64,000 bases of DNA, taken from the IMG/VR virus record IMGVR_UViG_3300044796_000662, positions 62,001-126,000 of that record; one strand, given 5' to 3'. Within the stretch, counting starts at the first letter, position 1; each line of letters starts with the position of its first letter. Positions 8,657-47,890 of the stretch are shown here, piece by piece. A program made the position numbers and the translations under genes. The notes below the pieces were generated by a model. The model did not search any database. It was not told where the DNA came from and saw nothing but the letters and a program-made list of their open reading frames with translations.

Positions 8657-9388
8657 TCAGGTGAGGAAACGAGCAGCGACACGCTCGGCGAGCCCAAGCG
8701 AAGCCGTTTTCGTTACGGCAGTTGACCCCTCGGTCGTGTAGGTGGATTCGAGCCCAGGATCGAGATAGTTGAAGCGAATCAAGTCCGCTTCCAGACCGAC
8801 CTCATCGGCCACCTTGTCGAGAGTCTTGAGGAACTCAGCGCGAAGCACCTTGGTACGAGCCCGGCGCTGCGTGGGAAGCGATTGCCCGGCCGACCGTGTT
8901 TCGTTCAGAGCCGAATGCATCCTGACGTTGGCGTTGTAGCCTCGGATGTCCTTCATCGAGAGCTTGTGCCGGCTCAAATAATCCCCGACCATCTCGGCCG
9001 TGACCCTGCCTGTGTCGTGGGCGAACAGCTCGTCGTTGTCGTCTTCTGTGGTCTCGAACGCCGTCTGAAGAGCCTGGATGATGGTCCGGTTCGCTATCGG
9101 CCGACGCTTGCCAGCGCTTCGGTAGGTCGCGGACCACTCTTCCTCCCCCAACTCGACGTTCTTCTTACGCCAACCCACGGGGTCCTCGTTGGTCTCCACC
9201 ATGAGGCCAACCGCCAAAGCCGTGAGGAACCTGTTCGGGTCTCCAGAACTCAAGTCGCGGCGGATGCGTCCCTGCATCGACTCGACCGCCGAACGAATGC
9301 GGCTCAAGCGTCGCGAGGTCGAGCGTGCCTTGCGCTCCTCGCTCATCATACCCTTGGCTTTCGCGCGTGCGAGAACGTTGAAGTTCAC
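8657..9388 (-). CDS. Degenerate type IB topoisomerase-like protein with C-terminal RVAARF tag
   Basis: MKDIRGYNA and VADEVG...NYLDP resemble TopIB KDFRT and VAxxLGxTxxxxxxSY(I/L)DP; GTG 9388 with GGAGG SD and GTGA overlap. Confidence 0.65.
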   Translation of the reverse strand: MNFNVLARAKAKGMMSEERKARSTSRRLSRIRSAVESMQGRIRRDLSSGDPNRFLTALAVGLMVETNEDPVGWRKKNVELGEEEWSATYRSAGKRRPIANRTIIQALQTAFETTEDDNDELFAHDTGRVTAEMVGDYLSRHKLSMKDIRGYNANVRMHSALNETRSAGQSLPTQRRARTKVLRAEFLKTLDKVADEVGLEADLIRFNYLDPGLESTYTTEGSTAVTKTASLGLAERVAARFLT

Positions 9389-11637
9389 GCTGTGGCCTCC
9401 TCGTCGGCGGGCGGCAAGCCCTCGGGAGCCTTGCCGGTCTTGATGACACTCAGGAGCCACTTCGAGGGCTCTTCCTTGAGGTGGCCAAGCACGAACGTTG
9501 TCAGCAACTCGGCGAACCATTCCATGTGGTTCTTGCGCGAGTAGGTCGTGGGGACCCAATCGTGGAGCTGCACTTCGTAGCGGTCGTCGGGCTTGCTGAT
9601 CTCTCCCTTCAGAGTCTCATAGACCTCGTGCCGTTCCTTCTCGACCTCTTTCAGCTCCCGCTCCTTCGCCTCGTCCTTCCCCACGTAAGTCAACGTGGAG
9701 GCAGACTCCGGCACGACAAGCGGGCCTGGCCCACGACGATACATCGAGCTGCGGAGGAGGTACTTCTCCGGCGCTTCGATGATCTCGATGAGGACGTCCC
9801 GGCCCTTCTTGCCGACGATCTTCCCCTTGATGTGGTACTGAACACCGTTTGACCAGGTGTCGTACTCGACCACGGTTCCCTTGCGTGGGAGCGGCCGGTG
9901 GATGTACTGCGTCTCTTCCAGTTCCTTGTAGCGCTTGTTGAGTACGTCGAGGCGCCGCTTCAGCACGTCTCGCGATCCCCCAGCTTGCGTGCGCTTCTGG
10001 CGCATGGCCCACATGAAGCGGGTCATGACCTCGACGTTGTTCTGGCCGCCCGGCACCACCTTGTCGTGGTAGTAGTGCGCCAGCTCGTGGATCAACGTGT
10101 GGAGGAAGCTTGCGTCCTCGTACGCCTTGGGTGCCACCTGGATCGCGGGTGGGCTCGAACCCATGTGGTACACGGCGGCTGCGTGCGAGCCGATGCCGCC
10201 ACCGTAGAGCGCCACAAGGATGTTGTCCTGAAGCGGCACCCCGGCGGCCTGGTACTTCTGCTCGGACTCCAGGAGTAGCTTGCCAACTTCTTCGAGGTGC
10301 TCGGCGTGCTGCTTGATGTAGCGCACCTTGAACCGACCGAACTGCTCCTCGTTGAACTGCACTGCCGCGTGCCGGTTCTTGAGGGCGTCGCGAAGGCTCT
10401 GGTCCGGGCCGATGCCGAGGTTGTTCCGAAGCGTGTTCGCCATCGAGTGGGCCTCGTTGTACGAGATCCCCATCTCCTGCATGATCTGACGGTCGCTCAT
10501 CCCTGACATGAACAGGTGGGCGAAGTCGTGGAGCTTCTTGTCGAAGGCCCCGCCACCCGTGCACTTGCAGCCGCCAGCGGTCTTGCCGGCCGCCTCGGCT
10601 TCCGCCTGTGCCTTGAGCGCGTTCTCCTTCACGTCTGCACGCCAGACCTTGTAGAGCCCGAAGACCTTGTTCTGCTTGCGGCCCTTGGGAATCGGCTCGA
10701 CTTCGATCGTGGGGTTGCCCCACTTGTCCGTACTGAAACCAACGATCTTGCCGCGCTTGTTCTTGTACTTGCCGTACAGAACGATGTCGCCCGGCTTGAA
10801 GTAGTTCGCGTACTTGAGTGCGACGCTGGCGGCGAGTCGGTCCATTCCCCCTTGCTCGTCGAAAAGTAGCTTAGCCTGCTCCATCCGGTCGTAGACGCCC
10901 TTGAGGATGGTCGCCTTGTTCTTCGGCGTCAGATGGTCCTCGATGACCTTCCACGTCGTGGACAGAAGCAGCGCGTAGTGCAGGAGTTTCTGATTGGGGT
11001 GGGGGTCCTTCTCGGCGCGCTCCCGTAGCATCACATGCATCTGGTCGCTCTTGCCGACGTTGTGGATCACCTCGTCGGCGATCTGCTGCATGAAGGCCCG
11101 GACCTCCGAGGGATCGTTGATGTATGGACCCCAGGCCGCCTCCCCCTTCTCCATGACTTCCTTGGGGGAGTAGGTCAGCCCTTTCATGTGATCCATCTCG
11201 GCGGCGTGCGTCGCCTCGTGGATCAGGAGTGAGTACAGGCCGTAGTTCAGGCACGTCTCAGCCCGGCACGAGTGAATGGGCTGGATGCGAAGAGGAGCCG
11301 TGAGGGACCCTTCTGTGTTCAGGTACTCGGCCGGAGTGAGCGCCCCGTTGATCTCCAGCTCGATCACCCCGGGACGTGTCCGGCCTCCGAGCACGGCAGC
11401 GTACTTGCCCTTAGCCTCACGAGCCGACACGTAAACGTCGTACCGAAGAGGGTAGCCTTTGACGGACTCGATCCGAAGCGGCTCTCCGCGGACGATCCCG
11501 TCCACATGCCCGATCGGCTCGTCTTGCTTCTGCCGGCGCAACCAGCGCACGATCTCCGGCACAAGCTGGCCTTCGACGAACTGCGCAATCGCGCCCTTGT
11601 CGAGCCAGATCGGTCGGGTAGCAGAGCGGTCCATCAT
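9385..11637 (-). CDS. Multidomain (polyvalent) protein: zincin, SH3-like, HTH, second zincin
   Basis: LIHEATHAAE and LIHELAHYYH...EWFAE motifs; the N-terminal module is paralogous to 26026..26754. Confidence 0.8.
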   Translation of the reverse strand: MMDRSATRPIWLDKGAIAQFVEGQLVPEIVRWLRRQKQDEPIGHVDGIVRGEPLRIESVKGYPLRYDVYVSAREAKGKYAAVLGGRTRPGVIELEINGALTPAEYLNTEGSLTAPLRIQPIHSCRAETCLNYGLYSLLIHEATHAAEMDHMKGLTYSPKEVMEKGEAAWGPYINDPSEVRAFMQQIADEVIHNVGKSDQMHVMLRERAEKDPHPNQKLLHYALLLSTTWKVIEDHLTPKNKATILKGVYDRMEQAKLLFDEQGGMDRLAASVALKYANYFKPGDIVLYGKYKNKRGKIVGFSTDKWGNPTIEVEPIPKGRKQNKVFGLYKVWRADVKENALKAQAEAEAAGKTAGGCKCTGGGAFDKKLHDFAHLFMSGMSDRQIMQEMGISYNEAHSMANTLRNNLGIGPDQSLRDALKNRHAAVQFNEEQFGRFKVRYIKQHAEHLEEVGKLLLESEQKYQAAGVPLQDNILVALYGGGIGSHAAAVYHMGSSPPAIQVAPKAYEDASFLHTLIHELAHYYHDKVVPGGQNNVEVMTRFMWAMRQKRTQAGGSRDVLKRRLDVLNKRYKELEETQYIHRPLPRKGTVVEYDTWSNGVQYHIKGKIVGKKGRDVLIEIIEAPEKYLLRSSMYRRGPGPLVVPESASTLTYVGKDEAKERELKEVEKERHEVYETLKGEISKPDDRYEVQLHDWVPTTYSRKNHMEWFAELLTTFVLGHLKEEPSKWLLSVIKTGKAPEGLPPADEEATA

Positions 11638-12743
11638 CGTCTCCTGACCAGGATGCGGTCGCCCTGGCTGTTCATAAGGGCGATCTGATCGTCTGACAGA
11701 CGGTTGGGGTGCGTCGCGTAGAGCGTCACGGGTCCCTTTCGAAAGACGATCTTCACGCGAACCTCGCGGCCGCCCTTGTCCTGCCAGACATCGGCGACCG
11801 TGCCCTTCTCGCGCGCCCCGATGTCCAGGTCCCGGGAGCCTTTGAGCACTTCGATCGTGTCACGAGGCTTGAGTGCGAACTCGCCTCGGATCTTGTTCGG
11901 ATCGTCCTGGACCTCGAAGAGCTTCTCGTGCTTGCGCTTCTGTTGGAGGATCTGGAACGAGGTCGGGATGGGATTCGAGGGCCGAAGGTGGATCCCGATG
12001 CGTGCCGTCTCGATCGCATCGTCCTTGCTCGGAGCATCATCAACGATGACCTTACCGTCGTTCGTGAGCACCTTCCAGACGTTACCCTCCTCCGTGACCC
12101 GCACGTCCACGCCGAGGATAGAGCCCTGGAAGAGCTTGGGGTGCACCTCGCGCAAATCAATGTCCTTGACCGGACGTTTGGCGACGTACTCCTTGGCGTC
12201 CTCGATCGACATGGGCACCATCTTGTGATCCGGGTGCACCACAAAGAGGTCCACGTCATGTACCCCCACGGTCATCGAGCACCCAAGCCCGAAGTTGCAG
12301 ATGTTGGCGTCGATCACCGCAGGCTGCTTCTCGGGGCCGTTCGGGTCGAACTCCACCTTGGGGTCGAGATGGTGAAACGTGGTGCCGATCGCGTCGTACT
12401 TCGCGAGGAAGAGGTCGTCCCCGTAGCGGCCGCCCCGCAGCCGGTTGCCGACCTCGATGACCTCCGTAACGTTCTCGGCCCACGATGCTCCGTGAGCACG
12501 TTCAGCGGGAGTCGAGTAGGTGCCGCCCGTGATCTGGCCAGTCTTGAGGATGCGGACCAGCTCCTCCCCGTCGAAGATGCGGTAGAGGGTGAAGCTGGAA
12601 TCGAACTCGGCGACGATCTGGTTCGGCAGAGACGTGAACCGCTGGCGGATCTTGTTCGTCGCGTCACGGTCGATGAGGATGCGGACCGTGCGCGCGTAAC
12701 GCACTCGAAAGCGCGTCAGAACACGGGTAGTCAGCGCGTCCAT
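11634..12743 (-). CDS. Hypothetical protein with RV-x-x-R-F leader, possibly ADP-ribosyltransferase-like
   Basis: 369 aa; MDALTTRVLTRFRVRYA leader; LYR...E...I..TG...GASW pattern. The ORF is solid, the function is tentative. Confidence 0.6.
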   Translation of the reverse strand: MDALTTRVLTRFRVRYARTVRILIDRDATNKIRQRFTSLPNQIVAEFDSSFTLYRIFDGEELVRILKTGQITGGTYSTPAERAHGASWAENVTEVIEVGNRLRGGRYGDDLFLAKYDAIGTTFHHLDPKVEFDPNGPEKQPAVIDANICNFGLGCSMTVGVHDVDLFVVHPDHKMVPMSIEDAKEYVAKRPVKDIDLREVHPKLFQGSILGVDVRVTEEGNVWKVLTNDGKVIVDDAPSKDDAIETARIGIHLRPSNPIPTSFQILQQKRKHEKLFEVQDDPNKIRGEFALKPRDTIEVLKGSRDLDIGAREKGTVADVWQDKGGREVRVKIVFRKGPVTLYATHPNRLSDDQIALMNSQGDRILVRRR

Positions 12744-12746
12744 GCC

Positions 12747-13592
12747 CTACCGCCGGCATCGAAACAGAACCGCCCCAGGAGGGACGATGAGCTGTTCGAG
12801 CCAGCCGTAGAACCCGTTGATGTCCGCGAATTGAGGGAAGAATCTGGACGCGCCGCCGGCGTCGCCAGGGTCGGTCCCCCCGTCAGGCCCCACCCCCCAC
12901 CCCGTGATCCCGTCGCTCTGACGCCTCTTTGTAGGGGTCACGTTGCCCCGAGCCCGTAGTTCCCCGCTGAGGGCGTCCAGAGCGAGCCTGGGGCACCCTG
13001 GGACGCACGACCAGTCGTTGACGGTCTCCAACCCGTCCGCGTCGGCATAGCCCTCCCAGGCGCCTGTGCGGGTCGTCCGCGTGCCCTTCTGCGAGAACTG
13101 CGTCGAGCTACCCCCAGGACCGTTGGGGTAGCCCTTGTGGCCGGGGATGCGGGACTGTCCGGGGGTGCATTCGGGCGTGTGAACGATGGCTAGGTTGGTC
13201 GGCCATCGTCCTCCTGTATGGCTCTCCGTGTAATTCAAGTGCCCGTTTCCCCAAGCATCGTCACTATGGGGAAACGTTCCGCGAGGTCGCCCACGGTCCT
13301 CTGTGGTGGCAACTCGGCAGACGTCGATGTGGAGTCCCCCTGTACCCGTCGAGAGCACTTGCTCCGCCACCGTGGGAGCCTCCAGGGGCTTGCGAAAGAG
13401 CAACACAGGCTCAGCCCGCGGCCCAGGCAAGAGCACGAGCAGCGTGTCCCTCAGGTGCAGCCCCGCCTGCCTGGCATCCAGGGAGGCCATGGGGTTGTCA
13501 CCGAAGACGGCAACGAAGGCCCCAGGGGACAGCTCGTCGATGACCCCGAAAGCCGAGTCCCCGAAGAAGAGGAACGCAGCCCCGAAGGTCAC
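12747..13592 (-). CDS. Degenerate N4/N6 DNA methyltransferase-like protein
   Basis: EPVLLFRKPL...GTGGLHIDVCRV, GRWPTN and GASRFF match the phage MTase core; no DPPY or FxGxG visible. Confidence 0.62.
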   Translation of the reverse strand: MTFGAAFLFFGDSAFGVIDELSPGAFVAVFGDNPMASLDARQAGLHLRDTLLVLLPGPRAEPVLLFRKPLEAPTVAEQVLSTGTGGLHIDVCRVATTEDRGRPRGTFPHSDDAWGNGHLNYTESHTGGRWPTNLAIVHTPECTPGQSRIPGHKGYPNGPGGSSTQFSQKGTRTTRTGAWEGYADADGLETVNDWSCVPGCPRLALDALSGELRARGNVTPTKRRQSDGITGWGVGPDGGTDPGDAGGASRFFPQFADINGFYGWLEQLIVPPGAVLFRCRR

Positions 13593-14596
13593 TGCGCCGA
13601 CTCGTACCAGAGCACGAGCTGCTCGACCATCTTGTATGGGTTGAGGTCGTGCGGAACGACCGCACGATTGAACCCCGCGGCCCTCGTGTGGCCCCCACCA
13701 CCGTTGCTCTTCGCGAACGCGAGGCAGTCGAAGTCCGTGTGGCTGCGCGTCGAGAGGAGCATCTTGGGCGTGCCGTTCTCGACGATGTACGAGAAGCCGA
13801 TGATGAGGTCCGCCTCAGTGCCGAGCGCCTCAGCCGCGTCGCTCGTTGTCTTGAGGCCGTCGAACGTGACGACCTTCGTACCCTTGGCGCTCGTAAACCT
13901 GTAGGCGGACTCGATCGTCTTCTGGACCGACTTCTCCATGCGCTCGATGAGGAGTCGGCCGATAGCCCTGCGTTCCTCCCAGATGGGGACCATCGCCGAC
14001 GAGAAGGGGCTTCCGATGCTCAGCCAGTGCTCGACGGGGTAGAAGCGGAGCATCTCGGCCTGCGCACAGGCATCCCTCCACCACGGGTGTGTATTGAGCC
14101 AGGTGTCACGCACGCCCGCGAGGGTGGCAAACTCCTCGGCCCTCTTCTGCTCTTCGATGGCCACCGTGTCCGTGGCGTCCTCCACCGGATTTACCAGGCG
14201 CCACACGTGACGGAATGCGAGGACGGCGCCGCAGACACCCGGCTCGGTCTTCTCGTTGCCGAAGTGCCCTCGCTTGGGGCCGAAGGCTTCCACGACGTCC
14301 TGCACGCCCTTGTGGTGGTCGAGCACGAGGGTGCCGGCATCGATCCACGGCTTGAGGGCGTCGAGATCGTTCTTCAACACCCCATCGACGGTCTTGGTCG
14401 GCACGTACGGCACGAAGTCGCAGAAGAGGTAGCCGGGCTCTGGCACGAGAGCCTTGAGCGCGTCCGTGTTGTGCTGCATGAACCGGATCTCTGCCTGGGG
14501 CAGAGAGTCATGGAGCAGGATCGCGCTGGCCACCCCGTCCGGACAGTTGTCGTGGACAACGATGGTCTTGACCTGTGCAAGCTCGTGAACGTACAT
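13589..14596 (-). CDS. DHH/DHHA1 phosphoesterase (NrnB-like)
   Basis: HDNCPDG, LDHHK, GGGGHTRAAG. Confidence 0.87.
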   Translation of the reverse strand: MYVHELAQVKTIVVHDNCPDGVASAILLHDSLPQAEIRFMQHNTDALKALVPEPGYLFCDFVPYVPTKTVDGVLKNDLDALKPWIDAGTLVLDHHKGVQDVVEAFGPKRGHFGNEKTEPGVCGAVLAFRHVWRLVNPVEDATDTVAIEEQKRAEEFATLAGVRDTWLNTHPWWRDACAQAEMLRFYPVEHWLSIGSPFSSAMVPIWEERRAIGRLLIERMEKSVQKTIESAYRFTSAKGTKVVTFDGLKTTSDAAEALGTEADLIIGFSYIVENGTPKMLLSTRSHTDFDCLAFAKSNGGGGHTRAAGFNRAVVPHDLNPYKMVEQLVLWYESAQ

Positions 14597-14632
14597 GCCG
14601 CACCCCTACACCGGGGCGCTATGCATGAGTCG

Positions 14633-15010: not shown

Positions 15011-15015
15011 GTGGG

Positions 15016-16705: not shown

Positions 16706-16723
16706 GTGCATCCTCCAAACGGA

Positions 16724-24698: not shown

Positions 24699-25607
24699 TC
24701 ATTCAGCCTCGGCAGCGGCCTCCAAAGCCTCCTGGACCGTCTCGGGCTCCAGTTCCTTCAGCTCCTTGGCGACAGCGGCCGCGATCAACATCTGGAAGAC
24801 CTCATCCGGATCCACGTGATCCGACTTCTGGTCCTGCGTCGCGATTCGCTCCATCAGCTCGGAGAACAGCTCAATCGAGTGGTGCCCGATGTGAGCGATC
24901 TCCTCGAACGTCGGTAGGTGCTCCAGACGCTTGACCACGGCTTTGATGGCGATCTTCTTGGCCGTGCTCGAAATGAACGAGCCCATGACGCCCTTGGCCA
25001 GGAGACCCGCTCCGGCGCCGATCCCCGCCCCGAGCGCCCCTGCGGCCGTAGCGATGGCAACGTGAGTCGCCACCTTGCGGAACGCCGCCTTCTGGTGCTT
25101 GGACATCGGCTTGCCCTTCATCCAAGCGCTGACACCCTGCCCGGCCTCCTTGAACTCGTGGACCTCTTCCTTGGCGGCGTCCCAGGCGTTCTTGACGAAC
25201 TTGGTGGGCGCTTCCGTGATGGACTTGTGCGCCGACATGAGGGTCTTGAAGCGGAACTCCTCGTCGTGGACGAACTTCTGGACCTTCTCGGGGGCCGACG
25301 CCAAGAAGGACTTGGCCTTCGAGGACAGGCCCTTCATGACGTCCTTCCAAGACGACTTGGGCTTCTTGTCCTTGTGCTCGTCCTTGTGCTCGTGCTCGTG
25401 CTCGTGCTCGTCCTTGGCCTCACCCTCCGGCTTCTTCTCGTGCTCGCCCGGCTTCTTGACCGTGTGCTTGCTCTTGTCCGCGTCGGGGTGGTCGTGGAGG
25501 TACTTCTTCAGCGCCTCAGGCGAAGAGAACTCGAACGCTCGCTGGTATCGCGCGGCCACCCGCAGCGACAACCCCAGCTCGATTGCCCAACGCCCCGACG
25601 CGTTCAT
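24699..25607 (-). CDS. Putative virion/ejected protein with RVAARY leader, His/Glu tract and hydrophobic segment
   Basis: LSLRVAARYQRA, KDEHEHEHEHKD, AVAIATAAGALGAGIGAG; ATGA overlap. Confidence 0.7.
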   Translation of the reverse strand: MNASGRWAIELGLSLRVAARYQRAFEFSSPEALKKYLHDHPDADKSKHTVKKPGEHEKKPEGEAKDEHEHEHEHKDEHKDKKPKSSWKDVMKGLSSKAKSFLASAPEKVQKFVHDEEFRFKTLMSAHKSITEAPTKFVKNAWDAAKEEVHEFKEAGQGVSAWMKGKPMSKHQKAAFRKVATHVAIATAAGALGAGIGAGAGLLAKGVMGSFISSTAKKIAIKAVVKRLEHLPTFEEIAHIGHHSIELFSELMERIATQDQKSDHVDPDEVFQMLIAAAVAKELKELEPETVQEALEAAAEAE

Positions 25608-25996
25608 CGGCGGTAGGTCTTGGCGAAGTGGCTGGACATCGGCTTCCCGTTCTCTTCCGCCGGCATGGGCGTGTCCGTGGGGATGATGTTGTCCATTCCT
25701 TCCTTCTTGCCGCCGGGCGTGTCGCCCTTGTTCTTCATGGACCAGGCCAGAGCCCAAGGGTTGTCGATCTCGTCATGCTTCTTCATCTTCTTGACGGTGT
25801 TCTCCCAACCGGGGGGCGCCACCGCGACCTGATCCATCTCGCCAGCCATGGGGGTCGGCCGAGAGATCGAAGCCTCTTCGTCGGCCTCCATCTCGGCATC
25901 GACGTACTCCGCCAGGTGCTCTTCGAGCAGGGGATTCTGCGCCTTCTTTTCCAGGAAACGCGCTGCTACACGTGCCGAAAGGGCCAGCTTGCTCAT
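25604..25996 (-). CDS. Putative virion protein with RVAARF leader
   Basis: MSKLALSARVAARFLEKKA; NPWALAWSM motif. Confidence 0.7.
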   Translation of the reverse strand: MSKLALSARVAARFLEKKAQNPLLEEHLAEYVDAEMEADEEASISRPTPMAGEMDQVAVAPPGWENTVKKMKKHDEIDNPWALAWSMKNKGDTPGGKKEGMDNIIPTDTPMPAEENGKPMSSHFAKTYRR

Positions 25997-26025: not shown

Positions 26026-26754
26026 CTAGACAAGCCCGTCCTCATCCAGCGCGCGGTAAACGGCCTTGAGGATGAGTGCCTTGTTCTGGGGCGTCAGGTG
26101 GTCCCGGATCTGGCGCCACTTGGGGAGCATGTCCAACACCTTGTTGACGAACTCCTGGGGAGAGGCGTGCGGCATCACGCGCTTGCGGTAGCCGGGGGCG
26201 ATGTTCCGCAGGTTGTCCACGATTTGCTGCATGTACGCGCGGACCTCGTGGGGCGAGTTGTAGTACCTGTCCGCGCTCTCCGGATCGGAGAGCACTGCAC
26301 TCTCCTGGACCAGGTCCTTGTGCGAGTGGTACCACCACTCGGCAGCATGCGTGAGTTCGTGGATCAGGTCGTTGAAGATGAGGTTCGACAGCGTGTGCGT
26401 GTCCACGTAATCGCCGTAGGTCTTGCTTCCGTTCAGACGGATCACAAGGTGTAGGTCCCCATCTTCGAGCAGGTCTGCCCTACGGATGTACGCGCCCGTG
26501 ATGAGCTGGTCGCTTTGGGAAGGCTCCGACGAGAAGGCGCCGTCGATGCGCATATCGTCCCCCCGCACGGACTTGATCTTCCAGGACCATGCGAGAACCT
26601 GAGAGTCGTGCCCAAGCTGCATGTCCTGCGGCTGGCGGCGGCAGTGGTCCTCAACCTTCTTGCCCAGCTCCTCGGCGAGCTGACGGATCTCACCCTTGTC
26701 CAGGGGGATCGGCCGGGTCGCGTACCGTGCGGCTACACGTAGGGTGAGCGTCAC
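26026..26754 (-). CDS. HExxH metallopeptidase-like protein with RVAARY leader
   Basis: LIHELTHAAE...YYNSPHEVRAY; paralog of the N-terminal module of 9385..11637. Confidence 0.75.
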   Translation of the reverse strand: MTLTLRVAARYATRPIPLDKGEIRQLAEELGKKVEDHCRRQPQDMQLGHDSQVLAWSWKIKSVRGDDMRIDGAFSSEPSQSDQLITGAYIRRADLLEDGDLHLVIRLNGSKTYGDYVDTHTLSNLIFNDLIHELTHAAEWWYHSHKDLVQESAVLSDPESADRYYNSPHEVRAYMQQIVDNLRNIAPGYRKRVMPHASPQEFVNKVLDMLPKWRQIRDHLTPQNKALILKAVYRALDEDGLV

Positions 26755-26777: not shown

Positions 26778-28061
26778 CTACGCGCGGGCCTTCAGAGTCC
26801 GACGCCCATCGACGATGATCGGCACTCCCTTACCCGTGATCACGTCGGCCGTGATGCGGATGCTCGCGATGTCCATGCTTGGACCATCGTAGGCGTAGGG
26901 TGCGAGAGTCTCCTCCAGGATCGAACGGAGCCCACGCGCTCCCGTGGGTCGGCGCTTCGCCTCCTGGCCGATGGCCAGGAGAGCATCCGTGTCGAACTGC
27001 AAGTCGATGTCGTCCATGGCGAAGAGCGCCTGGTACTGCTTCACGAGGGCGTTCTTCGGCTCCGTGAGCACCTTGACCATGTCCTCGTCAGACAGCTCCA
27101 GCGTGCTCGTAACGATGGGCAGACGGCCGAGCATCTCGGGGATGATCCCGAACTCCAAGATGTCCTCGCCCTTGACCTCCGTGTAGACCTCGTTGAGCGT
27201 GAGCTTGCGCCGCTTCGTGTCCTCCGAGCCGAAGCCGAGCCGCGAGGACTTGTTCACCCGCTGCTCTACCACCTCGTCGATGCCCGCGAAGCTGCCCGCA
27301 GCAACGAACAGGATGTTGGTCGTATCGAGCACGTCCACGTTCGAGCGCACCTCGCCGTTGGGGCCTACAGACGTCACGGACACGTTCTTGCCCATCCCAC
27401 GCGTGACGGGCACAGAGCAGCCTTCCAAGGTCCGCAGCATGCCTTGCTGGACGCCTTCGCCCGTGATGTCGCGGTAACCGGAGGCGGAACGTCCGCTCTT
27501 GCGGGCGATCTTGTCGAATTCGTCGAGCAAGATGATGCCCCACTCGGCGCGCTGGATGTCCCCGCCGGCGTTCTGGACGAGCCCGCGAAGCATGTCGTCC
27601 GCGTCGTCGCCCACGTAGCCTTGCTGCGTCAGCCGGGTGCAGTCCTGCGTGTAGAACGGGACCTTCAGAAGCTCGCTGATCGCCCTGAACGTCTCGGTCT
27701 TGCCCGAGCCAGTGGGGCCGAGGATCAGCATGTTGGACTTCTGGACCTTGATCGAGCCCGCCTTCTTGGCCCGAGCCGCGTCCCTACGCTTGAAGTGGTG
27801 GTAGACCGCGGTGGAGACCGCCCTCTTCAGCCTTTCCTGCGCGATGATGTGCTCGTCGAGGTACGCCTTGATCTGATGGGGCGTCCCAAGGACGGGCTCC
27901 CGCTTCTTGTCGCCCTTGGGGGCCGACTGCTCGATGAGGTTCGAGGCTCCTTCCACGCACGTCTCGCAGATGTAGACGCCGTTGCCCTTGATCAGGCGGT
28001 TGTTGGGGACCTCGTTCTTCTCGGACCCACAGAAAGAGCACACCTCGTGGTCGGTCGGCAT
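26778..28061 (-). CDS. clpX: ATP-dependent Clp protease ATPase subunit ClpX
   Basis: CSFC..C..C zinc domain, GPTGSGKT, GYVG pore loop, DEFDK, GEGVQQ, LGF loop, TGARGLR. Confidence 0.93.
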   Translation of the reverse strand: MPTDHEVCSFCGSEKNEVPNNRLIKGNGVYICETCVEGASNLIEQSAPKGDKKREPVLGTPHQIKAYLDEHIIAQERLKRAVSTAVYHHFKRRDAARAKKAGSIKVQKSNMLILGPTGSGKTETFRAISELLKVPFYTQDCTRLTQQGYVGDDADDMLRGLVQNAGGDIQRAEWGIILLDEFDKIARKSGRSASGYRDITGEGVQQGMLRTLEGCSVPVTRGMGKNVSVTSVGPNGEVRSNVDVLDTTNILFVAAGSFAGIDEVVEQRVNKSSRLGFGSEDTKRRKLTLNEVYTEVKGEDILEFGIIPEMLGRLPIVTSTLELSDEDMVKVLTEPKNALVKQYQALFAMDDIDLQFDTDALLAIGQEAKRRPTGARGLRSILEETLAPYAYDGPSMDIASIRITADVITGKGVPIIVDGRRTLKARA

Positions 28062-42329: not shown

Positions 42330-43798
42330 ACGTTGTTGAGAAGGTCGGTTTCGTCCTGCACGCCCATGCCCGGAGCCGAGTTGTAGAGGTCGAGGTTACG
42401 CATGCGCCGGCAGGTGAAGTCCACCTCGGCGAGGAACGGCTCGAAGAGCGGGTTGTCCCGGTTCTTGAGGCACGAGAACTTCGTCTGCCCCTGTGCACGC
42501 AGTTCCTGGCTGAGATAGGTAGCCGTGACCACGTCTGCGGAGCGCTCGGCCTCGTTCGAGTACGAGAGCGCTTGCAAGTTCTTGTAGATGCCGTCGTTCT
42601 TCTCCGCCTCGGTCTTGCCGGTACGGTTGATCTGGAAGAGCAGGAGCGTCGGCATCCCCTCGCCGTGGTTGAAGTGCAAGGCGAACTTCTTGGCGTCGCG
42701 GAGGATGGTGTTCAGCTCGATCGTGTAGTCCTTCTTGCTGCGGTTCTTCTTGCGGGCTTCCATGAGGCCACCGTGGTCCAGAACCGTGAACCCGATCTCG
42801 GATTGCTTGTGAAGCAGCTCCACTTCGATCCGCGCTTCGTCGAAGTCCACGTCGTGGTCGGGAGCCCACGTGTGGAACTCGCAGTAGTCCGGGTTGTGCG
42901 TGAAGTCGTCGATGACCTTCTGGTAGAAGATCTCTTCCTCGGGCGTGAGGTCCCCGTCGCGCACCTTGCGGTAATCGAGTGCCTTGTAGCCCTCCAACGC
43001 CCAACGAGGGTGCGAGGAGTGCATGACGTAGATGAGCCGGCGGATGTGCTCGTAGCCCATCTCGAACGTCGCATACATGACGTTCGTGCGGTAGCGAGTG
43101 ACCAGGTTGTAGCACCAGTTGGTTGCGAAGGTGCTCTTCAACTCCCCGGCGAACGCCGCGTGGATGTGCAGCTCCTTCTTCTTCAAGCCGTGACAGATGG
43201 TGTCGATCCGGTCGATGCCCGTGAAGCGGCCCCAGACCTTGTCCTTGTTCAGCTTCGCTGTCAGGTACTCGTCCCAGACCTCTTGACCATCCTTGCGGAT
43301 GTCACCCCTTTGGCGTGACCCGCCTTCGAGGACGATCAGGTCGTTGGCCTTGCTGACGAAGTGCATGATGCCGTCTTGCACTCCGCGGCGCTGGATCTCC
43401 TCCCGACCCTCCTTGATGGTCAGGCCCTTCGTGACAATCTGATGGGCCTCCTTGAGAAGCTCCGTCACCTTGCGCTGATTCTGCTGCTCGATGAGAGTCT
43501 TGAGCAGGTGCGCGAAGTTGGTACGGATGTAGAACTGCGCTGCCTCGATGTCCTTGAGGCGCTCGGTAACTTCCGTGTCCTTCTCGAAGTAGTCCCGGAC
43601 CGTCTCGATGGACGGCATCTCCATGTTCGGCTGGAAGTACGACCCGAGGAACTTGTAGATCGCCGTGTCCTCTGGCAGCTCCCACTCCAGGGGTGACTCC
43701 CGGATGCGCTGGAAGTTGAGCAGGAGGTTGTCCTGCGTGAGACCACGTTCTTGCGAGGTCGCGCCGAAGTCGATAACGGAGCGGAGCAGGCGCTTCAT
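42326..43798 (-). CDS. dnaB: DnaB-like (SF4) replicative helicase
   Basis: FTGIDRID, ELKST, FEM, VLDH, FQINR, AERSADVV, KNRD. Confidence 0.85.
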   Translation of the reverse strand: MKRLLRSVIDFGATSQERGLTQDNLLLNFQRIRESPLEWELPEDTAIYKFLGSYFQPNMEMPSIETVRDYFEKDTEVTERLKDIEAAQFYIRTNFAHLLKTLIEQQNQRKVTELLKEAHQIVTKGLTIKEGREEIQRRGVQDGIMHFVSKANDLIVLEGGSRQRGDIRKDGQEVWDEYLTAKLNKDKVWGRFTGIDRIDTICHGLKKKELHIHAAFAGELKSTFATNWCYNLVTRYRTNVMYATFEMGYEHIRRLIYVMHSSHPRWALEGYKALDYRKVRDGDLTPEEEIFYQKVIDDFTHNPDYCEFHTWAPDHDVDFDEARIEVELLHKQSEIGFTVLDHGGLMEARKKNRSKKDYTIELNTILRDAKKFALHFNHGEGMPTLLLFQINRTGKTEAEKNDGIYKNLQALSYSNEAERSADVVTATYLSQELRAQGQTKFSCLKNRDNPLFEPFLAEVDFTCRRMRNLDLYNSAPGMGVQDETDLLNNV

Positions 43799-44688
43799 CG
43801 TGAACCCCTCTTGCTCTTGAACTTGAACTTCTTGGGCGCTTTGGGCGCATCCAGGTCCGCGAGGTCAGGTCGGCCGAGGTCATCTCCCCCGGACGCTGGC
43901 TCCGGATCTGGATCGGACGATGGTTCCCACTCCTCGACGCTCAGAGCCGCATCCGGGGGTGCAGAGACAAGGACGTTCTGCGGTCCAGAGTAGACGTACG
44001 GCGCAGGCCGGTCATCTTGCTCCTCGGAGGGCGTCGAGGTGCTGGGCACATCGAGCACTTCGAAGTGCGAGAAGATGTAGTCGGCGACATCCTCGCTGTA
44101 CGAGTGATGGCCGACAACGAATGGGTAGTCTGCCTTGTCCACGATCCACGTCGCCTTGTGGGCGACTTCGCGAAGCATGAGTGCTTCCTTCAACGCGCCG
44201 GCCATCGCGACGTTCTTGTGGCCCAGATACCCGAGAAGAAGAATCACGAGGTCGTGGTCGCAGACCAGATCTGAGAGCGAGTTGTACGACTTGGTCGTCT
44301 CACGCTCTTCCTTCGGCTTGACCCGTGCCGACTCGTTGCCGACGAACACATTCTTGATCCTCTCGTCGGTGACGATGAGAAAGCGGAACATCAACCCCTT
44401 GCAGATGAGCGCGTAACGGAAGTGAGCGATCATGTCGCTCCACCGGCCGCGCAAGAAGAGGTTGTCCGCAGTCTTGTCATCGAGCGGCGGATCATCTGGG
44501 ACTGGCCCACGCACGAACAGCGGCGAGGACTGGATCTTCCTGGCGCGAGCGATCTCCGGCCCCAAGTGCTGCCGCATCATCCGGCGCCGTGCGCAACTGC
44601 ACAGGCGACTGTGCATGTCGTCCACACGGATCTTCCCTCGCCCGTTGCAAATCTCGCAGACTGTCTCTCGCTCGATAGGGGGCGCCAT
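43795..44688 (-). CDS. DnaC/helicase-loader-like protein with Zn finger and degenerate P-loop
   Basis: CEICNGRG...CSC, DLVIL, position next to the helicase; no GKT. Confidence 0.55.
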   Translation of the reverse strand: MAPPIERETVCEICNGRGKIRVDDMHSRLCSCARRRMMRQHLGPEIARARKIQSSPLFVRGPVPDDPPLDDKTADNLFLRGRWSDMIAHFRYALICKGLMFRFLIVTDERIKNVFVGNESARVKPKEERETTKSYNSLSDLVCDHDLVILLLGYLGHKNVAMAGALKEALMLREVAHKATWIVDKADYPFVVGHHSYSEDVADYIFSHFEVLDVPSTSTPSEEQDDRPAPYVYSGPQNVLVSAPPDAALSVEEWEPSSDPDPEPASGGDDLGRPDLADLDAPKAPKKFKFKSKRGSR

Positions 44689-44713
44689 CGGGAACCCCTA
44701 CACCGAACGGACG

Positions 44714-46492
44714 TCAGGTAGCGCGCATTCGGCCGAGCAAATCCTTCGCCGAAGACTTCTCCTTCTCGAACGAAAGTGCCCCCAGCGCGGCCTCTCCGAG
44801 CACTGTATCTACGAGGTTCTTCTTGCCATGGAGAAGCTCAAGCACATGGTGATCGATGGTCTTCTTCTCCTTGGCGGTCTTGCCGGGACGCACTGCCACG
44901 ATGTGGTAGACCATGACCGTCGAGTGGATTGACCCGATGCGTACGGGCCTGCCGAGAAGCTGCACATAGTTGCCGTAGGACCAGGGCGCGTCCATGAAGA
45001 CCATGGCGCTCGCTGCCTGAAGGTTGATCGCTTCCGAGCCGGCGTCCGTGATGAAGACCACCTTCGTGTCGGAGGCCAGGTCTTGAAAGCGCTTCTGCGC
45101 CTCCTGGCGGGCCTTGTCGTTCTCCTTGCCCGTGATTCGAACGCTCTTGATCTTCAGCTTGTTGAGTACCTCGACGAGCCGGGTCACGTACTTCTCGAAG
45201 CGCGTGTAGATGATGACCTTCTCGTCCTCCAGCTCCGTCGTCAGAAGCTCGACCAGGGCCTCTTCCTTGGCGCTCTGCTCGTTGACCTTGTCAGGGTTCT
45301 CGTCGAGAGCGAACTCGGACACCTCGTCGCCCGCCTTGAACTTGAGCAGGGCGAGCGAGTTGACGATCTCCTGGCAGTAGATGAGCGAGGCCATCGCCTT
45401 CGCCTCGGAGTAGTCCTTGACCTCCCCGTCGCCGAGCATGAGCACGCCCGAGAGAGCCTCACCGTACTTCGTGTCCTCCGCAGGAGACAGCTCGCAGACG
45501 ATCTCTTTCGTGATGAGCTTCGGCAGCTCGTTGGAGACCATGTGCTTGGCCCGGCCGATGAAGAACGGGTCGATCTTGTTCCGGAACTCCGCCAGGCGGC
45601 GATAGCCAACGACGATGGGGATCTTTCGACCCCCTGGGACGGACTGAAGCTTGACGACGCAGTATTCGTCCATGAACGCCGACTTCGTACCGAAGAGCGG
45701 CGGCTGGATGACCTTGAAGATGGAGAACCCCTCCATGAGGTTGTTCTTCAACAGCGTCGCGGTCAGGCCGTAACAACGACTCGCCCTGTCGGACAGGTAG
45801 CGGCACACCTGCCAGCGCTTGGTCCCCGTGTTCTTGAAAGCCGTGGCCTCGTCGTAAATGATGCAAAGACCCTTCATGTCCGCCGTGATGCGGTCGAAGA
45901 GCCCCGCCGCGACCGGGGCCTTGGGGTCCGGCTTGCCGTTCGGCAGCGTGGGCTTGAACGATCCGGAGTCCCAATCGCGCACGAGGATCGAGTAATTGAC
46001 GAGCAGGACCACCTTCTCGGCGTCCGGGCCAGTGGGAGCGTTGCGGAACTCCTCGTAGGCGCGGATCCTCTCCTCGGGCTTGCCGGCGGCAACGATGGGT
46101 CGGATGCCTGTCGTGAACCGCTTGATCTCCCCGGCCCACTGCCACAGGGCGCTCTTCGGGGTCACAACGATGACCTTGTTGTCCGGCTCCTTGGGCCAGA
46201 GGTAGGCCAGAGCCGCGAGCACCTGGATGGTCTTGCCGAGCCCAGTACCATCTCCCAGGATCAGCCGCTTCATCGCGAGCAGGTGGTAGATGCCGATGTA
46301 CTGGTAGTAGCGGAGCTTGAACGGGATGATGGCCCCGTCCTTCTCGATCTCCGTCCGCAGAAGCGGTGTAGGCTTCAACGTGAGGGTCGTGGACTTGCGG
46401 ACCTCAAGCAAGTGCTCATAGGTCTTCCGAAGCTTCTCCAGCCCCGCCCTCTCTTCGGCAGTCGGTTCCCGGGTCTTCTTCTTGGCTGCCAT
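44714..46492 (-). CDS. SNF2-family helicase/translocase
   Basis: LGDGTGLGKT, IYDEAT, LTATLLKNNL, GSEAINLQ, QLLGRPVRIG. Confidence 0.92.
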   Translation of the reverse strand: MAAKKKTREPTAEERAGLEKLRKTYEHLLEVRKSTTLTLKPTPLLRTEIEKDGAIIPFKLRYYQYIGIYHLLAMKRLILGDGTGLGKTIQVLAALAYLWPKEPDNKVIVVTPKSALWQWAGEIKRFTTGIRPIVAAGKPEERIRAYEEFRNAPTGPDAEKVVLLVNYSILVRDWDSGSFKPTLPNGKPDPKAPVAAGLFDRITADMKGLCIIYDEATAFKNTGTKRWQVCRYLSDRASRCYGLTATLLKNNLMEGFSIFKVIQPPLFGTKSAFMDEYCVVKLQSVPGGRKIPIVVGYRRLAEFRNKIDPFFIGRAKHMVSNELPKLITKEIVCELSPAEDTKYGEALSGVLMLGDGEVKDYSEAKAMASLIYCQEIVNSLALLKFKAGDEVSEFALDENPDKVNEQSAKEEALVELLTTELEDEKVIIYTRFEKYVTRLVEVLNKLKIKSVRITGKENDKARQEAQKRFQDLASDTKVVFITDAGSEAINLQAASAMVFMDAPWSYGNYVQLLGRPVRIGSIHSTVMVYHIVAVRPGKTAKEKKTIDHHVLELLHGKKNLVDTVLGEAALGALSFEKEKSSAKDLLGRMRAT

Positions 46493-46531
46493 CGCCCCGC
46501 CCCTACACCGGGCGCTGGGGCTCCTGGGCGC

Positions 46532-47890
46532 TTAGCTCAGGATGGGCAGAAGCAGATCTAGCTGTTCCTTCGGGAGCTTACCGATGGCGTAGAACGAGAC
46601 CATCTCGGCGAAGTTCTCGCCGGGGCCGCCCTTCTTGGCGTAGCCCGTGATGAAGTCCAGCGGGTCCACCTTCTGCTCAACACCGTTGAGCTTGAAGAAC
46701 ATGGCCGCCGGCATGACGATCGTCTCCCTGCGGGCGATGGGGAACTTGTGCTCCTCATCGGGCTCGTGCTCAGCCCGGCCCTTCTCTGCGCAGACGAAGC
46801 ACCGCAGAGGGTTGGCCGGGGCGAGCTTCACGGAGCGGCGACGGGTATCGCGCTCGATGACCTTCCAAGGCTCCCCCTTATAGGGGACTGACGCGCCAAA
46901 CGCGGGCAGCTCGGTTTCCGACATGAAGCCCGTGTGCGTGTTGATCGTGGAGTAGAGCTGCGAGATCTCGTGCTCTTTGCCTTGCAGGAACTTGTGCTCC
47001 AGCCGGTGCGTCAGCTCGTGACAGAGAACCCGGACGGTGTCCATGTTCACCTTCGAGTCGGCACGAATGAACATCTCGTCCTTGGCGACGACGTAGAACG
47101 CCGCCCAGTTGGGCCGCTCGATGCGGTTGGACAGGATGATGTCCCCGTAGTTGACCTTCCCCAAGCCGATGCCTGCCATCTTTTGAGCGGCCTCTTCGGC
47201 GAGCTTGGCGATGTTCTGCATCTGCTCCGTGCTGAAGCCGCCCGAGTTGACGAGCGTGAAAGGCCCGGCCTTGAACCGCGTTGCGCCCTCTCCCTCGCCT
47301 GCGTGCTGCTTGCCCTGGCTGATCGCGATCTCGAAGACCTTCTCCTGCTTGCGGAAGTCTTCGAGGAAGTCGAGGTAGATCTGGACAGCCTTGGCTCGCG
47401 CCTCTTCGTAGGTGCGGCCCCGTGTGCTGAAGCGCGGCGTACGGGCGTAGAACTTCGCGATAGCCTCAATCGCTTTGCGAGGCTTCGGCGGCAGCACAAG
47501 CTGTTGCAGGATGGCCCAGCACAGGTTCTGCGCGACGTCCTGGATCTTGCCCCATCCGTGCTGCATCGAGTGAGTGGTGATCTCGTACGACAGGTCGCGC
47601 TCTTTGCGACGCTTGCCGTCCTGGGACTCTTCGATGGTCTGGACCAGCGCGTTCTCACGGACGGCCTTGATCTTCTCGGCGGGGGCGCCTTCGGCCTGTA
47701 GCTTCGTGACCTCGGCGAATGCCTCCACGTACTTCTTGGCCATCGCCTCCTTCTCGGCGTACTTGGCCACGGCCCTCTTGAACTGCGCAAGCAGATCCCC
47801 GGGGTCGCCGAAAGAGTCGGCCCGCTTCGAACGTTCGGCGACCCGCGAGGCGAGGACGACGCGCTCTACAACTCGATCCAAGGACTTCAT
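46532..47890 (-). CDS. Zincin-like metallopeptidase protein with RVA-type leader
   Basis: LCHELTHRLEH...GENFAEMVSFY; leader SRVAERSKRA. Confidence 0.75.
   Translation of the reverse strand: MKSLDRVVERVVLASRVAERSKRADSFGDPGDLLAQFKRAVAKYAEKEAMAKKYVEAFAEVTKLQAEGAPAEKIKAVRENALVQTIEESQDGKRRKERDLSYEITTHSMQHGWGKIQDVAQNLCWAILQQLVLPPKPRKAIEAIAKFYARTPRFSTRGRTYEEARAKAVQIYLDFLEDFRKQEKVFEIAISQGKQHAGEGEGATRFKAGPFTLVNSGGFSTEQMQNIAKLAEEAAQKMAGIGLGKVNYGDIILSNRIERPNWAAFYVVAKDEMFIRADSKVNMDTVRVLCHELTHRLEHKFLQGKEHEISQLYSTINTHTGFMSETELPAFGASVPYKGEPWKVIERDTRRRSVKLAPANPLRCFVCAEKGRAEHEPDEEHKFPIARRETIVMPAAMFFKLNGVEQKVDPLDFITGYAKKGGPGENFAEMVSFYAIGKLPKEQLDLLLPILS

What the first reader, a model, noticed from the sequence alone, without database searches (positions are those of the whole stretch)
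9385..47890. Expanded family of zincin (HExxH) modules, including a four-domain polyprotein
Seen: five HExxH motifs in four genes (5712, 9385 twice, 26026, 46532). Module 1 of 9385 aligns with 26026 (HExTHAAE; Y.N.P.EVRA(F/Y)MQQI.D; W..I.DHLTP.NKA.ILK.VY). Module 4 of 9385 aligns with 46532 (HELxH...E.FAE), and each has a different SH3-like insert between HExxH and the third ligand. Known: metallopeptidase domains are common in phage polyvalent proteins delivered with the DNA. Inference: an ejected protease arsenal against host defence or regulatory proteins, with variable inserts setting substrate specificity.
Basis: partly seen in the sequence, partly recalled or inferred. Interest (0 to 1): 0.6.

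Follow-up and report, generated by a model that had tools for sequence, protein, structure and literature searches.

The report
Zinc-protease modules in a huge phage
A very large uncultured phage encodes several intact zinc-protease domains of the kind known from phage "polyvalent" effector proteins, so the motifs are real, but they are new members of a known kind and nothing yet shows that they are injected with the DNA.

Summary
All five HExxH motifs sit where stated, in real genes of a 363-kb huge-phage record. HExxH is four-fold over-represented genome-wide (20 seen, 5.0±2.3 in shuffles).

- **One family or several:** at least three lineages are distinct by sequence.
  - An unnamed gluzincin clade holds gene 26026 and module 1 of gene 9385. 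It has over 1000 representatives, many inside 1000-2000-aa proteins with topoisomerase IB, 2H, GNAT, ART-PolyVal, InPase and LPD1 domains.
  - A Peptidase_Mx1-like clade holds gene 46532 and module 4 of 9385 (profile-profile probability 98.9%).
  - The small protein 5712 is only weakly zincin-like.
- **Gene 9385:** its order is zincin, KOW/Tudor-like barrel, LuxR-type HTH, zincin.
- **Active sites:** the catalytic residues are invariant in each clade, so these are probably active proteases.
- **Delivery:** the link to polyvalent proteins is supported. Ejection with the DNA is untested, and the neighbours are replication and metabolism genes, not virion genes.
- **New:** a short RVAAR(F/Y) peptide marks module boundaries across these proteins.

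The parts
9385..11637 (-). Gene for the 750-aa four-module protein P0001: zincin, KOW/Tudor-like barrel, LuxR-type HTH, zincin
   Evidence: Translation. AF2 model has mean pLDDT 84.9 with four well-folded blocks separated by low-confidence linkers. The modules occur separately and in other orders in relatives.
10852..11637 (-). Module 1 (residues 1-262): gluzincin-like domain of the 26026 clade, with H140-E141-x-x-H144 and E178
   Evidence: Homology to P0002 at E 8e-26. The invariant family columns are H, E, H, Y, N, E, R, A. Model topology is N-terminal helix, five strands, HExxH helix, Glu helix. The fold was not searched on its own.
11206..11220 (-). HEATH motif of module 1
10594..10851 (-). 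Module 2 (residues 263-348): small KOW/Tudor/SH3-like beta-barrel preceded by a degenerate RVAAR(F/Y)-type helix
   Evidence: 60-90% identical copies at N-terminal, central and C-terminal positions in proteins with topoisomerase IB, GNAT, poly(A)/CCA polymerase and 2H domains. Foldseek probability 0.99-1.00 to Tudor, PWWP and SAWADEE domains. Atlas TM 0.5-0.6 to PcrA/UvrD Tudor, SH3_HelY and DUF2158. KOW matches are weak only: Pfam E 0.12, uL24 E 0.17.
10360..10575 (-). Module 3 (residues 355-426): LuxR/GerE-type helix-turn-helix
9388..10359 (-). Module 4 (residues 427-750): Peptidase_Mx1-like zincin with H517-E518-x-x-H521, a beta-rich insert flanked by a helical hairpin (about 555-680), and E706-W-F-A-E710
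10075..10089 (-). HELAH motif of module 4
26026..26754 (-). Gene for P0002 (242 aa): solo zincin of the module-1 clade, with H132-E133-x-x-H136, E170 and an N-terminal LRVAARY leader
   Evidence: The profile search finds 1065 representatives at E<=1e-3.
26778..28061 (-). ClpX-like AAA+ unfoldase (P0148) 23 nt upstream of P0002
   Evidence: Pfam zf-C4_ClpX E 4e-11, AAA_2 E 2e-20, ClpB_D2-small. GYVG pore loop and an LGF loop are present. The same adjacency and 23-nt spacing occur in L003 and L005 but not in L004, L006 or L007.
46532..47890 (-). Gene for P0003 (452 aa): N-terminal helical bundle (25-195) plus Peptidase_Mx1-like zincin (199-452), with H291-E292-x-x-H295-R296 and E425-N-F-A-E429
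5712..6080 (-). Gene for P0004 (122 aa): small HELLH protein, a possible minimal zincin
   Evidence: Weak matches only: PF18818 MPTase-PolyVal E 0.06 (below cut-off), phrog_1233 E 9e-6, and phmmer E 0.003 to another HExxH protein of the genome. Not folded.
8657..9388 (-). Gene directly downstream of P0001 whose product ends in ...LAERVAARFLT
   Evidence: It shows the boundary motif at a C-terminus. No PHROG match.

Best explanation
The five motifs are the catalytic cores of real zincin-type zinc metallopeptidase domains. They are the kind that Iyer et al. (2017) call MPTases and found to be the commonest domain of phage and plasmid polyvalent proteins. In this huge phage they are encoded as solo or few-domain proteins rather than as one giant protein.

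There are at least three lineages:
1. A gluzincin clade with no Pfam model (HExxH, then Y-x-N-x-P-x-E-V-R-A about 34 residues later). It is present as gene 26026 and as module 1 of gene 9385.
2. A Peptidase_Mx1-like clade with a long beta-rich insert before the E-x-F-A-E helix. It is present as the C-terminal half of gene 46532 and as module 4 of 9385.
3. The 122-aa protein of gene 5712, which is only weakly supported.

The two His, the catalytic Glu and the downstream Glu are invariant across each clade. I therefore infer that these are active Zn-dependent endopeptidases that work inside the infected cell on particular protein targets. The targets could be host proteins, the phage's own multi-module proteins, or both.

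Protein 9385 joins two such peptidases to a KOW/Tudor-like barrel and a LuxR-type HTH. I infer that it works tethered to DNA, RNA polymerase or another nucleic-acid machine.

Shown here: the motifs, the homologies, the folds of module 4, module 3 and 46532, the conservation, and the fusion partners. Inferred: catalysis, the targets, the timing and the tethering.
For: - **Motifs and enrichment:**
- **Homology:** module 1 to 26026; module 4 to 46532.
- **Sequence link to a named family:** 45 of 80 relatives of 46532 match PF15890 Peptidase_Mx1, best E 4e-8.
- **Purifying selection on the active site:** invariant H, E, H and E in 18, 41, 80 and 12 sequences.
- **Polyvalent context:** the 26026-type domain sits in 700-2068-aa proteins with Topoisom_I, 2_5_RNA_ligase2, GNAT, InPase, ART-PolyVal, LPD1, PARP, Peptidase_C39 and SprT-like domains.
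- **Rest of the genome:** zincin-like domains are fused to a 2H/Acb1-like phosphoesterase, to LPD1 and to a GHKL ATPase.
- **Literature:** MPTases with variable inserts between the two catalytic helices, and 1-5 copies per protein (PMC5512222). Copy-number-variable zincins in jumbo phages, proposed to cut host proteins (PMC7824862).
Against: - None of the four proteins reaches any Pfam peptidase threshold itself.
- Module 1 and 26026 were never fold-searched as isolated domains. Their only structural neighbours are weak (ESM Atlas TM 0.38-0.41 to M61 and M1). Profile links to the other clade cover only the strand plus the HExxH helix (probability 52% and 30%).
- Gene 5712 rests on E-values of 0.003-0.06.
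- No substrate, activity, expression or timing data exist. All relatives are metagenomic, and no cultured phage carries them.
- Zincin folds with intact motifs sometimes have non-proteolytic roles.
Confidence: 0.6

Rival explanations
1. One reading: the proteases are packed into the virion and ejected with the DNA as an arsenal against host defence or regulatory proteins.
For: - The domain families are those of polyvalent proteins, which are predicted to be injected and in a few cases shown to be (PMC5512222).
- A shared RVAAR(F/Y) leader sits on 26026, on 46532 and on a SAM lyase elsewhere in the genome. It could be a packaging handle.
- Genes near 9385 look conflict-related: a DHH phosphoesterase, a metallophosphoesterase and a GT4 'conflict' glycosyltransferase.
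Against: - No virion gene was recognised in the 64-kb window. The neighbours that could be named are replication, nucleotide-metabolism and chaperone genes. In PMC5512222, a position next to virion genes is the usual argument for packaging.
- There are no proteomic data and no cultured relative.
- The leader also occurs internally and at C-termini, which an N-terminal capsid-targeting signal would not explain.
Confidence: 0.25
2. Self-processing: the zincins cut the phage's own multi-module proteins at the RVAAR(F/Y) junctions. This would release modules such as the four of 9385, or remove leaders.
For: - The motif sits exactly at module boundaries. It precedes module 2 in all 13 copies, precedes module 4 in P0023, P0027 and P0029, and occurs two or three times in multi-domain relatives.
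- It is strongly enriched: 15 against 1.1 expected, and 51 against 5.2.
- Autoproteolytic processing is one role proposed for MPTases, for example in P1 DdrB (PMC5512222).
Against: - In 9385 itself the junction motifs are degenerate (LAASVALKY, NRHAAVQF).
- Many large relatives carry no copy at all.
- In the models the motif is part of a helix (H3-21 of 46532, H265-277 of 9385). A helix is a poorer protease site than a loop.
- No cleavage data exist.
Confidence: 0.2
3. Gene 26026 works with the phage's ClpX-like unfoldase. It would be either the proteolytic partner of a split FtsH-like machine, or a substrate or adaptor recognised through its LRVAARY leader.
For: - The ClpX-like gene lies 23 nt upstream of the zincin in the window and in two relatives that share only 37-39% identity.
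- No ClpP was found in the 363-kb record.
- The leader resembles the SspB tail that binds the ClpX zinc domain. This is my recollection and was not tested.
Against: - Three other relatives lack the adjacency, so it may be inherited gene order.
- The ClpX-like protein keeps an LGF loop, which fits docking on host ClpP.
- The record is only 76% complete, so a ClpP gene could lie elsewhere.
Confidence: 0.1
4. Gene 46532 is a replication-linked protease of the SprT/Wss1 kind that removes proteins stuck on DNA. It would not be an anti-host weapon.
For: - In the window and in a 40%-identical relative it lies directly beside the SNF2 helicase, a 280-297-aa gene and the DnaB-like helicase, in the same order.
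- The family is broadly conserved (108 or more clusters), more like a core gene than a variable weapon.
Against: - More distant members sit in unrelated neighbourhoods.
- The best matches are lethal-factor, PPEP and Mx-type domains, not SprT or Wss1.
- No DNA-binding domain was identified in it.
Confidence: 0.1
5. The motifs are chance or relict. The proteins are not enzymes.
For: No protein reaches a Pfam threshold. Gene 5712 is supported only weakly.
Against: - Four-fold enrichment over shuffles.
- Invariant catalytic residues across hundreds of relatives.
Confidence: 0.03

Closest known systems
Zincin-like MPTase domains of phage and plasmid polyvalent proteins (Iyer et al. 2017, PMC5512222; Pfam PF18818 MPTase-PolyVal; ArdC C-terminal domain)
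   Same: - HExxH helix followed by a Glu-bearing helix, with variable inserts between them, and up to several copies per protein.
- The same fusion partners: ART-PolyVal, InPase, LPD1, GNAT, 2H and topoisomerase.
   Different: - Here they occur as solo or four-module proteins of 122-750 aa in a huge phage, not in giants of 1000 aa or more.
- No Pfam MPTase model matches them above threshold.
- The neighbours are replication genes, not virion or T4SS genes.
Pfam PF15890 Peptidase_Mx1 / PF15887 Peptidase_Mx (putative zinc-binding metallopeptidases; structure 4l7a)
   Different: - Gene 46532 and module 4 do not match the model themselves.
- They carry an extra beta-rich insert.
- In 46532 there is also an N-terminal helical bundle and an RVAAR-type leader.
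M34 family: anthrax lethal factor catalytic domain and Pro-Pro endopeptidases PPEP-2/3
   Different: Sequence identity is only 11-16% and there is no sequence-level match. This is a fold resemblance only and says nothing about targets.
SprT-like and ArdC-like zincins of jumbo phages (Iyer et al. 2021, PMC7824862)
   Same: Several zincin genes per jumbo-phage genome, varying in number, and proposed to cut host proteins.
   Different: These are different clades. SprT-like matches appear only as weak leads. This genome carries about 13 candidate zincin motifs, not 1-3.
CarD / TRCF-RID / PcrA-UvrD Tudor domains, and KOW domains of NusG and uL24
   Same: Module 2 is a small beta-barrel of this general fold. 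Like them, it is joined to enzymes and DNA-binding modules that act on nucleic-acid machines.
   Different: There is no significant sequence match. Binding to RNA polymerase, the ribosome or nucleic acid is untested.

Membership tests
Zincin / gluzincin superfamily (Peptidase MA clan) | HExxH on an alpha-helix, invariant in the family | tested here: met
   The motifs lie in predicted helices: 126-146 and 511-527 of 9385, and 283-301 of 46532. H, E and H are invariant in alignments of 18, 41, 80 and 12 sequences.
Zincin / gluzincin superfamily (Peptidase MA clan) | Third metal ligand (Glu) on the next conserved helix | tested here: met
   The invariant residues are E170 in 26026 (E178 in module 1), E425/E429 in 46532 and E706/E710 in module 4. 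Each lies at or in a predicted helix. Which of the paired Glu binds the metal is not resolved.
Zincin / gluzincin superfamily (Peptidase MA clan) | Fold: mixed beta-sheet packed against a backing helix, an active-site helix and a Glu helix | tested here: met
Zincin / gluzincin superfamily (Peptidase MA clan) | The same fold in module 1 / 26026 and in 5712 | tested here: inconclusive
   Module 1 has the right order of elements in the model and weak Atlas neighbours (M61 and M1, TM 0.38-0.41). The whole-protein searches were filled by module 4, so it was never tested alone. Gene 5712 was not folded.
Zincin / gluzincin superfamily (Peptidase MA clan) | Zinc binding and peptide-bond hydrolysis | not testable with these tools
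   This needs purified protein.
Pfam PF15890 Peptidase_Mx1 | Score above the curated threshold | tested here: not met
   Gene 46532 and 9385 give no hit even at E<=1. 45 of 80 relatives match at E<=0.01, best 4e-8. They are therefore divergent relatives, not members by the model.
Pfam PF18818 MPTase-PolyVal | Score above the curated threshold (27.5 bits) | tested here: not met
   Only 5712 matches, at 13.8 bits and E 0.06.
Polyvalent proteins (Iyer et al. 2017) | Several unrelated effector domains in one large polypeptide, with the MPTase as hub | tested here: inconclusive
   Gene 9385 has four modules, two of them MPTases, but is only 750 aa and has no other enzyme domain. Relatives of its modules do sit in classic polyvalent architectures.
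Polyvalent proteins (Iyer et al. 2017) | Gene context with virion or DNA-transfer genes; packaging and injection | tested here: not met
   Context: no virion family was found in the window by Pfam or PHROGs, and the named neighbours are replication and metabolism genes. Packaging itself cannot be tested here.
LuxR/GerE helix-turn-helix (module 3) | Four-helix HTH fold of the GerE type | tested here: met
KOW / Tudor / SH3-like barrels (module 2) | Five-stranded small barrel; KOW sequence motif | tested here: inconclusive
   Fold-level matches: probability 0.99-1.0 to Tudor and SAWADEE domains and TM 0.5-0.6 in the Atlas. The KOW motif is only E 0.12 in Pfam and E 0.17 to uL24.

The most novel reading that the evidence does not exclude
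The solo zincins, the SAM lyase, the 2H/Acb1-like fusion and other proteins of this phage clade may form a distributed polyvalent system. They would be held together, processed or routed by one short amphipathic peptide, phi-x-x-R-V-A-A-R-(F/Y). This peptide marks N-termini, C-termini and inter-module junctions in otherwise unrelated domains.

On this reading the peptide is a common address. It could be a cleavage site for the zincins, a docking helix for a shared hub such as the KOW-like barrel or the phage ClpX zinc domain, or a packaging handle. Protein 9385 would deliver two proteases to RNA polymerase or DNA through its KOW-like and LuxR-type modules.
Probability: 0.3. Interest if true: 0.7.

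Novelty: new member of a known kind. Interest (0 to 1): 0.42.

Why it matters
Zincin-type peptidases are the commonest domain of phage and plasmid polyvalent proteins, yet almost none has a known substrate.

This window offers small, cleanly bounded versions of two such clades. One of them has more than 1000 representative sequences and no Pfam model. Their active sites look intact and two of the predicted structures are confident, so they are convenient proteins for finding out what these peptidases cut.

The di-zincin protein with nucleic-acid-type tethering modules, and the recurrent RVAAR(F/Y) boundary peptide, give concrete hypotheses. These concern how huge phages aim, process or assemble their effector modules.

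If the peptide proves to be a processing or routing signal, it would let effector proteins be picked out by sequence in uncultured huge phages.

Tried and rejected
- **Direct family scans** of the four proteins gave nothing above threshold in Pfam or PHROGs. Single-sequence and profile searches of PDB sequences gave nothing significant.
- **Megablast** of 25 kb against the phage and plasmid collections found no match. Searches were a one-base length slip.
- **tblastn against cultured and deposited phages** found only two uncultured records for 9385, 26026 and 46532, and nothing for 5712.
- **Foldseek with whole multi-domain models** gave only weak E-values (0.01 or worse), although the lists were dominated by zincins. 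VIA-align was needed.
- **Searches with the 750-residue model** (pdb_via_wide, pdb_via, atlas) were filled by module 4, or aligned the model only as a whole at low TM. They never tested module 1 alone.
- **One family for all modules:** rejected. The module-1 clade aligns with the Mx1-like clade only at the strand plus the HExxH helix (probability 52% and 30%). Gene 5712 against the 46532 family gives probability 7%.
- **The insert of module 4 as a copy of module 2:** rejected (hhalign probability 0.2%).
- **The RVAAR motif as a DNA-level recombination site:** rejected. The codons differ freely at synonymous positions. A Tat signal was also considered and dropped: there is no twin arginine in most copies and no hydrophobic stretch after the motif.
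- **Complex prediction** of the ClpX-like protein with 26026 returned no verdict (score 0.00, controls not run). It counts neither for nor against binding.

Full report
**Setting.** The window is bases 62,001-126,000 of a 362,937-bp IMG/VR virus record (classed as a provirus, estimated 76% complete). Proteins identical to those of the window also occur on a 569,965-bp contig. G+C is 61-64% throughout.

Nearly all genes from 5.7 kb to 64 kb lie on the minus strand. Recognisable genes are:
- family A DNA polymerase, a DnaB-like helicase, a primase-like protein and an SNF2 helicase;
- ThyX and a SAM decarboxylase;
- a ClpX-like unfoldase and another AAA+ ATPase;
- a DHH and a calcineurin-like phosphoesterase.

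No virion protein family was recognised in the window. The nearest deposited sequence is an unannotated 485-kb uncultured phage. This is therefore a huge phage known only from metagenomes.

**The observation.** They are not chance. My 382 ORF calls for the whole record hold 20 HExxH, against 5.0 +/- 2.3 in shuffles. About 13 of them follow a hydrophobic run, as zincin active-site helices do.

Module 1 of the 750-aa protein (P0001, 9385-11637) is homologous to P0002 (26026-26754), with E about 1e-25.

Module 4 against P0003 (46532-47890) is marginal pairwise (E 0.01). Between family profiles it is decisive: probability 98.9%, E 3.9e-17, 221 columns. The aligned region runs from the sheet, through the HExxH helix and the core of the insert, to the T-x-Y...E-x-F-A-E-M...L-G-x-L helix.

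**What the proteins are.** The AF2 model of P0001 (pLDDT 84.9) has four folded blocks.
- Residues 263-348 are a small beta-barrel. Its neighbours are Tudor, PWWP, SAWADEE, PcrA/UvrD-Tudor and HelY-SH3 domains, with only weak KOW sequence signals.
- Residues 1-262 have the order helix, five strands, HExxH helix, Glu helix. Module 4 filled every hit list, so this block was never searched alone. Its zincin assignment rests on the invariant H-E-x-x-H...Y-x-N-x-P-x-E-V-R-A signature, on this topology, and on weak Atlas neighbours.

**Families.** The picture is several lineages, not one expanded family.
- The P0002/module-1 clade has no Pfam model but is large. The exhaustive profile search returned 1065 representatives at E<=1e-3 and 595 at E<=1e-10.
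More than 40 are 700-2068 aa long.
- 41 of these long proteins were scanned against Pfam. They carry Topoisom_I (6), DUF5661, 2_5_RNA_ligase2, Peptidase_M91, PolyA_pol, GNAT, InPase, ART-PolyVal, LPD1, PARP, Peptidase_C39 and SprT-like domains. This is the repertoire of polyvalent proteins (PMC5512222).
- The P0003/module-4 clade is a divergent branch of Peptidase_Mx1: 45 of 80 members match PF15890. All 108 relatives found keep HExxH.
- Module 4 occurs at the N- or C-terminus of other proteins, next to HAD_SAK_1 or topoisomerase IB domains.
- The two clades align with each other only at the last strand and the HExxH helix.
- P0004 (5712-6080) is a 122-aa protein with only weak links.

Outside the window the genome holds further zincin-like proteins. 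They are fused to a 2H/Acb1-like phosphoesterase, to LPD1 and to a GHKL ATPase.

**Mechanism.** The metal ligands and the catalytic Glu are invariant in every alignment, so the domains are under selection as enzymes. I take them to be active Zn endopeptidases.

Their partners in relatives act on nucleic acids or modify proteins. In P0001 two peptidases flank a KOW/Tudor-like barrel and a LuxR-type HTH. The simplest reading is a protease pair tethered to DNA, RNA polymerase or a related machine, cutting proteins found there.

Whether the targets are host proteins, as proposed for jumbo-phage zincins (PMC7824862), or the phage's own modular proteins, as proposed for some MPTases (PMC5512222), cannot be decided here.

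Ejection with the DNA is possible but has no support in this window. The context is replication and metabolism, and no proteomic data exist.

**Gene order.**
- P0003 lies beside the SNF2 and DnaB-like helicase genes, both here and in a 40%-identical relative. It does not in two more distant ones.
- P0002 lies 23 nt downstream of the ClpX-like gene, here and in two relatives of 37-39% identity. It does not in three others.
- The ClpX-like protein keeps its zinc finger, its GYVG pore loop and an LGF loop. No ClpP was found in the record.
- A complex prediction for this pair gave no verdict.

**An unexpected feature.** A short peptide, phi-x-x-R-V-A-A-R-(F/Y), recurs at module boundaries.
- In this genome the core RV[AV][AES]R occurs 15 times against 1.1 +/- 1.1 expected, and nine of these are in the first 30 residues.
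- It heads P0002, P0003, a SAM lyase and several unknown proteins.
- It precedes the KOW-like barrel in all 13 copies examined, and precedes module 4 in three relatives.
- It stands between the 2H and zincin halves of a fusion protein.
- It ends the protein encoded just downstream of P0001.
- A looser form of the core, with a hydrophobic residue required after it, is found in the first 30 residues of 69 of 107 P0003 relatives, sometimes twice in tandem. A similar loose pattern occurs 51 times against 5.2 +/- 2.0 expected in the 141 module-1-clade representatives.
- Synonymous sites vary, so selection acts on the peptide and not on the DNA.

I cannot say what the peptide does. A processing site, a docking helix and a routing signal are all open.

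**Verdict.** The zincin identity is well supported for four of the five motifs, with direct fold matches for two of them. The link to polyvalent proteins is supported by domain co-occurrence. The idea of an ejected arsenal remains an untested inference.

The finding is a new member of a known kind. Its value lies in giving tractable small versions of widespread but unstudied peptidase clades, and in the boundary peptide.

Noticed in passing
window 26722-26742 and 47828-47875 (N-termini of 26026 and 46532); window 8657-8700 (C-terminus of the gene downstream of 9385); window 10800-10851; many sites in G000: A short peptide, phi-x-x-R-V-A-A-R-(F/Y), marks N-termini, C-termini and inter-module junctions of unrelated domains. 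These include zincins, the KOW-like barrel, a SAM lyase and a 2H fusion, in this phage and its metagenomic relatives. The core occurs 15 times against 1.1 expected in the genome, and a looser form 51 times against 5.2 in relatives. Codons vary at synonymous sites.
   Followed up: partly
window 26778-28061 (-): A phage ClpX-like unfoldase with a zinc finger, a GYVG pore loop and an LGF loop. No ClpP was found in the 363-kb record. It is conserved 23 nt upstream of the 26026-type zincin in three of the six loci examined.
   Followed up: partly
window 10594-10851 (-): The roughly 80-aa KOW/Tudor-like module is unusually well conserved (45-80% identity). It moves between N-terminal, central and C-terminal positions in proteins with topoisomerase IB, GNAT, poly(A)/CCA polymerase, 2H and HAD_SAK_1 domains.
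   Followed up: partly
G000:C1:40405-41904, 56501-58756, 359767-361275, 313489-314184 (outside the window; loci L009, L011, L015, L019): Further conflict-type proteins elsewhere in the genome: a 2H/Acb1-like phosphoesterase fused to a HELGH zincin; a 751-aa HELSH protein with LPD1; a GHKL ATPase fused to a YgjP/WLM-like HELAH domain; and a SAM lyase with the RVAAR leader.
   Followed up: partly
window 24699-25757 (-): A 352-aa protein with a His/Glu/Lys-rich low-complexity run (HEHEHEHKDEHKDKK). It shares a 46-aa block at 63% identity with the product of G000 47596-49134, and that block begins with the RVAARY motif. Its HExxH is not a zincin motif.
   Followed up: no
window 52295-56857 (-) and 60174-62759 (-): Two very large proteins (1520 and 861 aa), each with a match to the E1_FCCH beta-barrel domain and no PHROG match. 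Their role is unknown and could be structural.
   Followed up: no
window 6090-8578 and 12747-14596 (-): Gene 9385 is flanked by a calcineurin-like phosphoesterase, a weak GT4 'conflict-system' glycosyltransferase, a weak methyltransferase-like protein and a DHH phosphoesterase. These look like a counter-defence or nucleotide-signal neighbourhood.
   Followed up: no
whole record G000: IMG/VR classes the 363-kb record as a provirus. Identical proteins lie on a 570-kb contig, and relatives lie on contigs of 283-490 kb. The provirus trimming may be an artefact for a huge phage.
   Followed up: no
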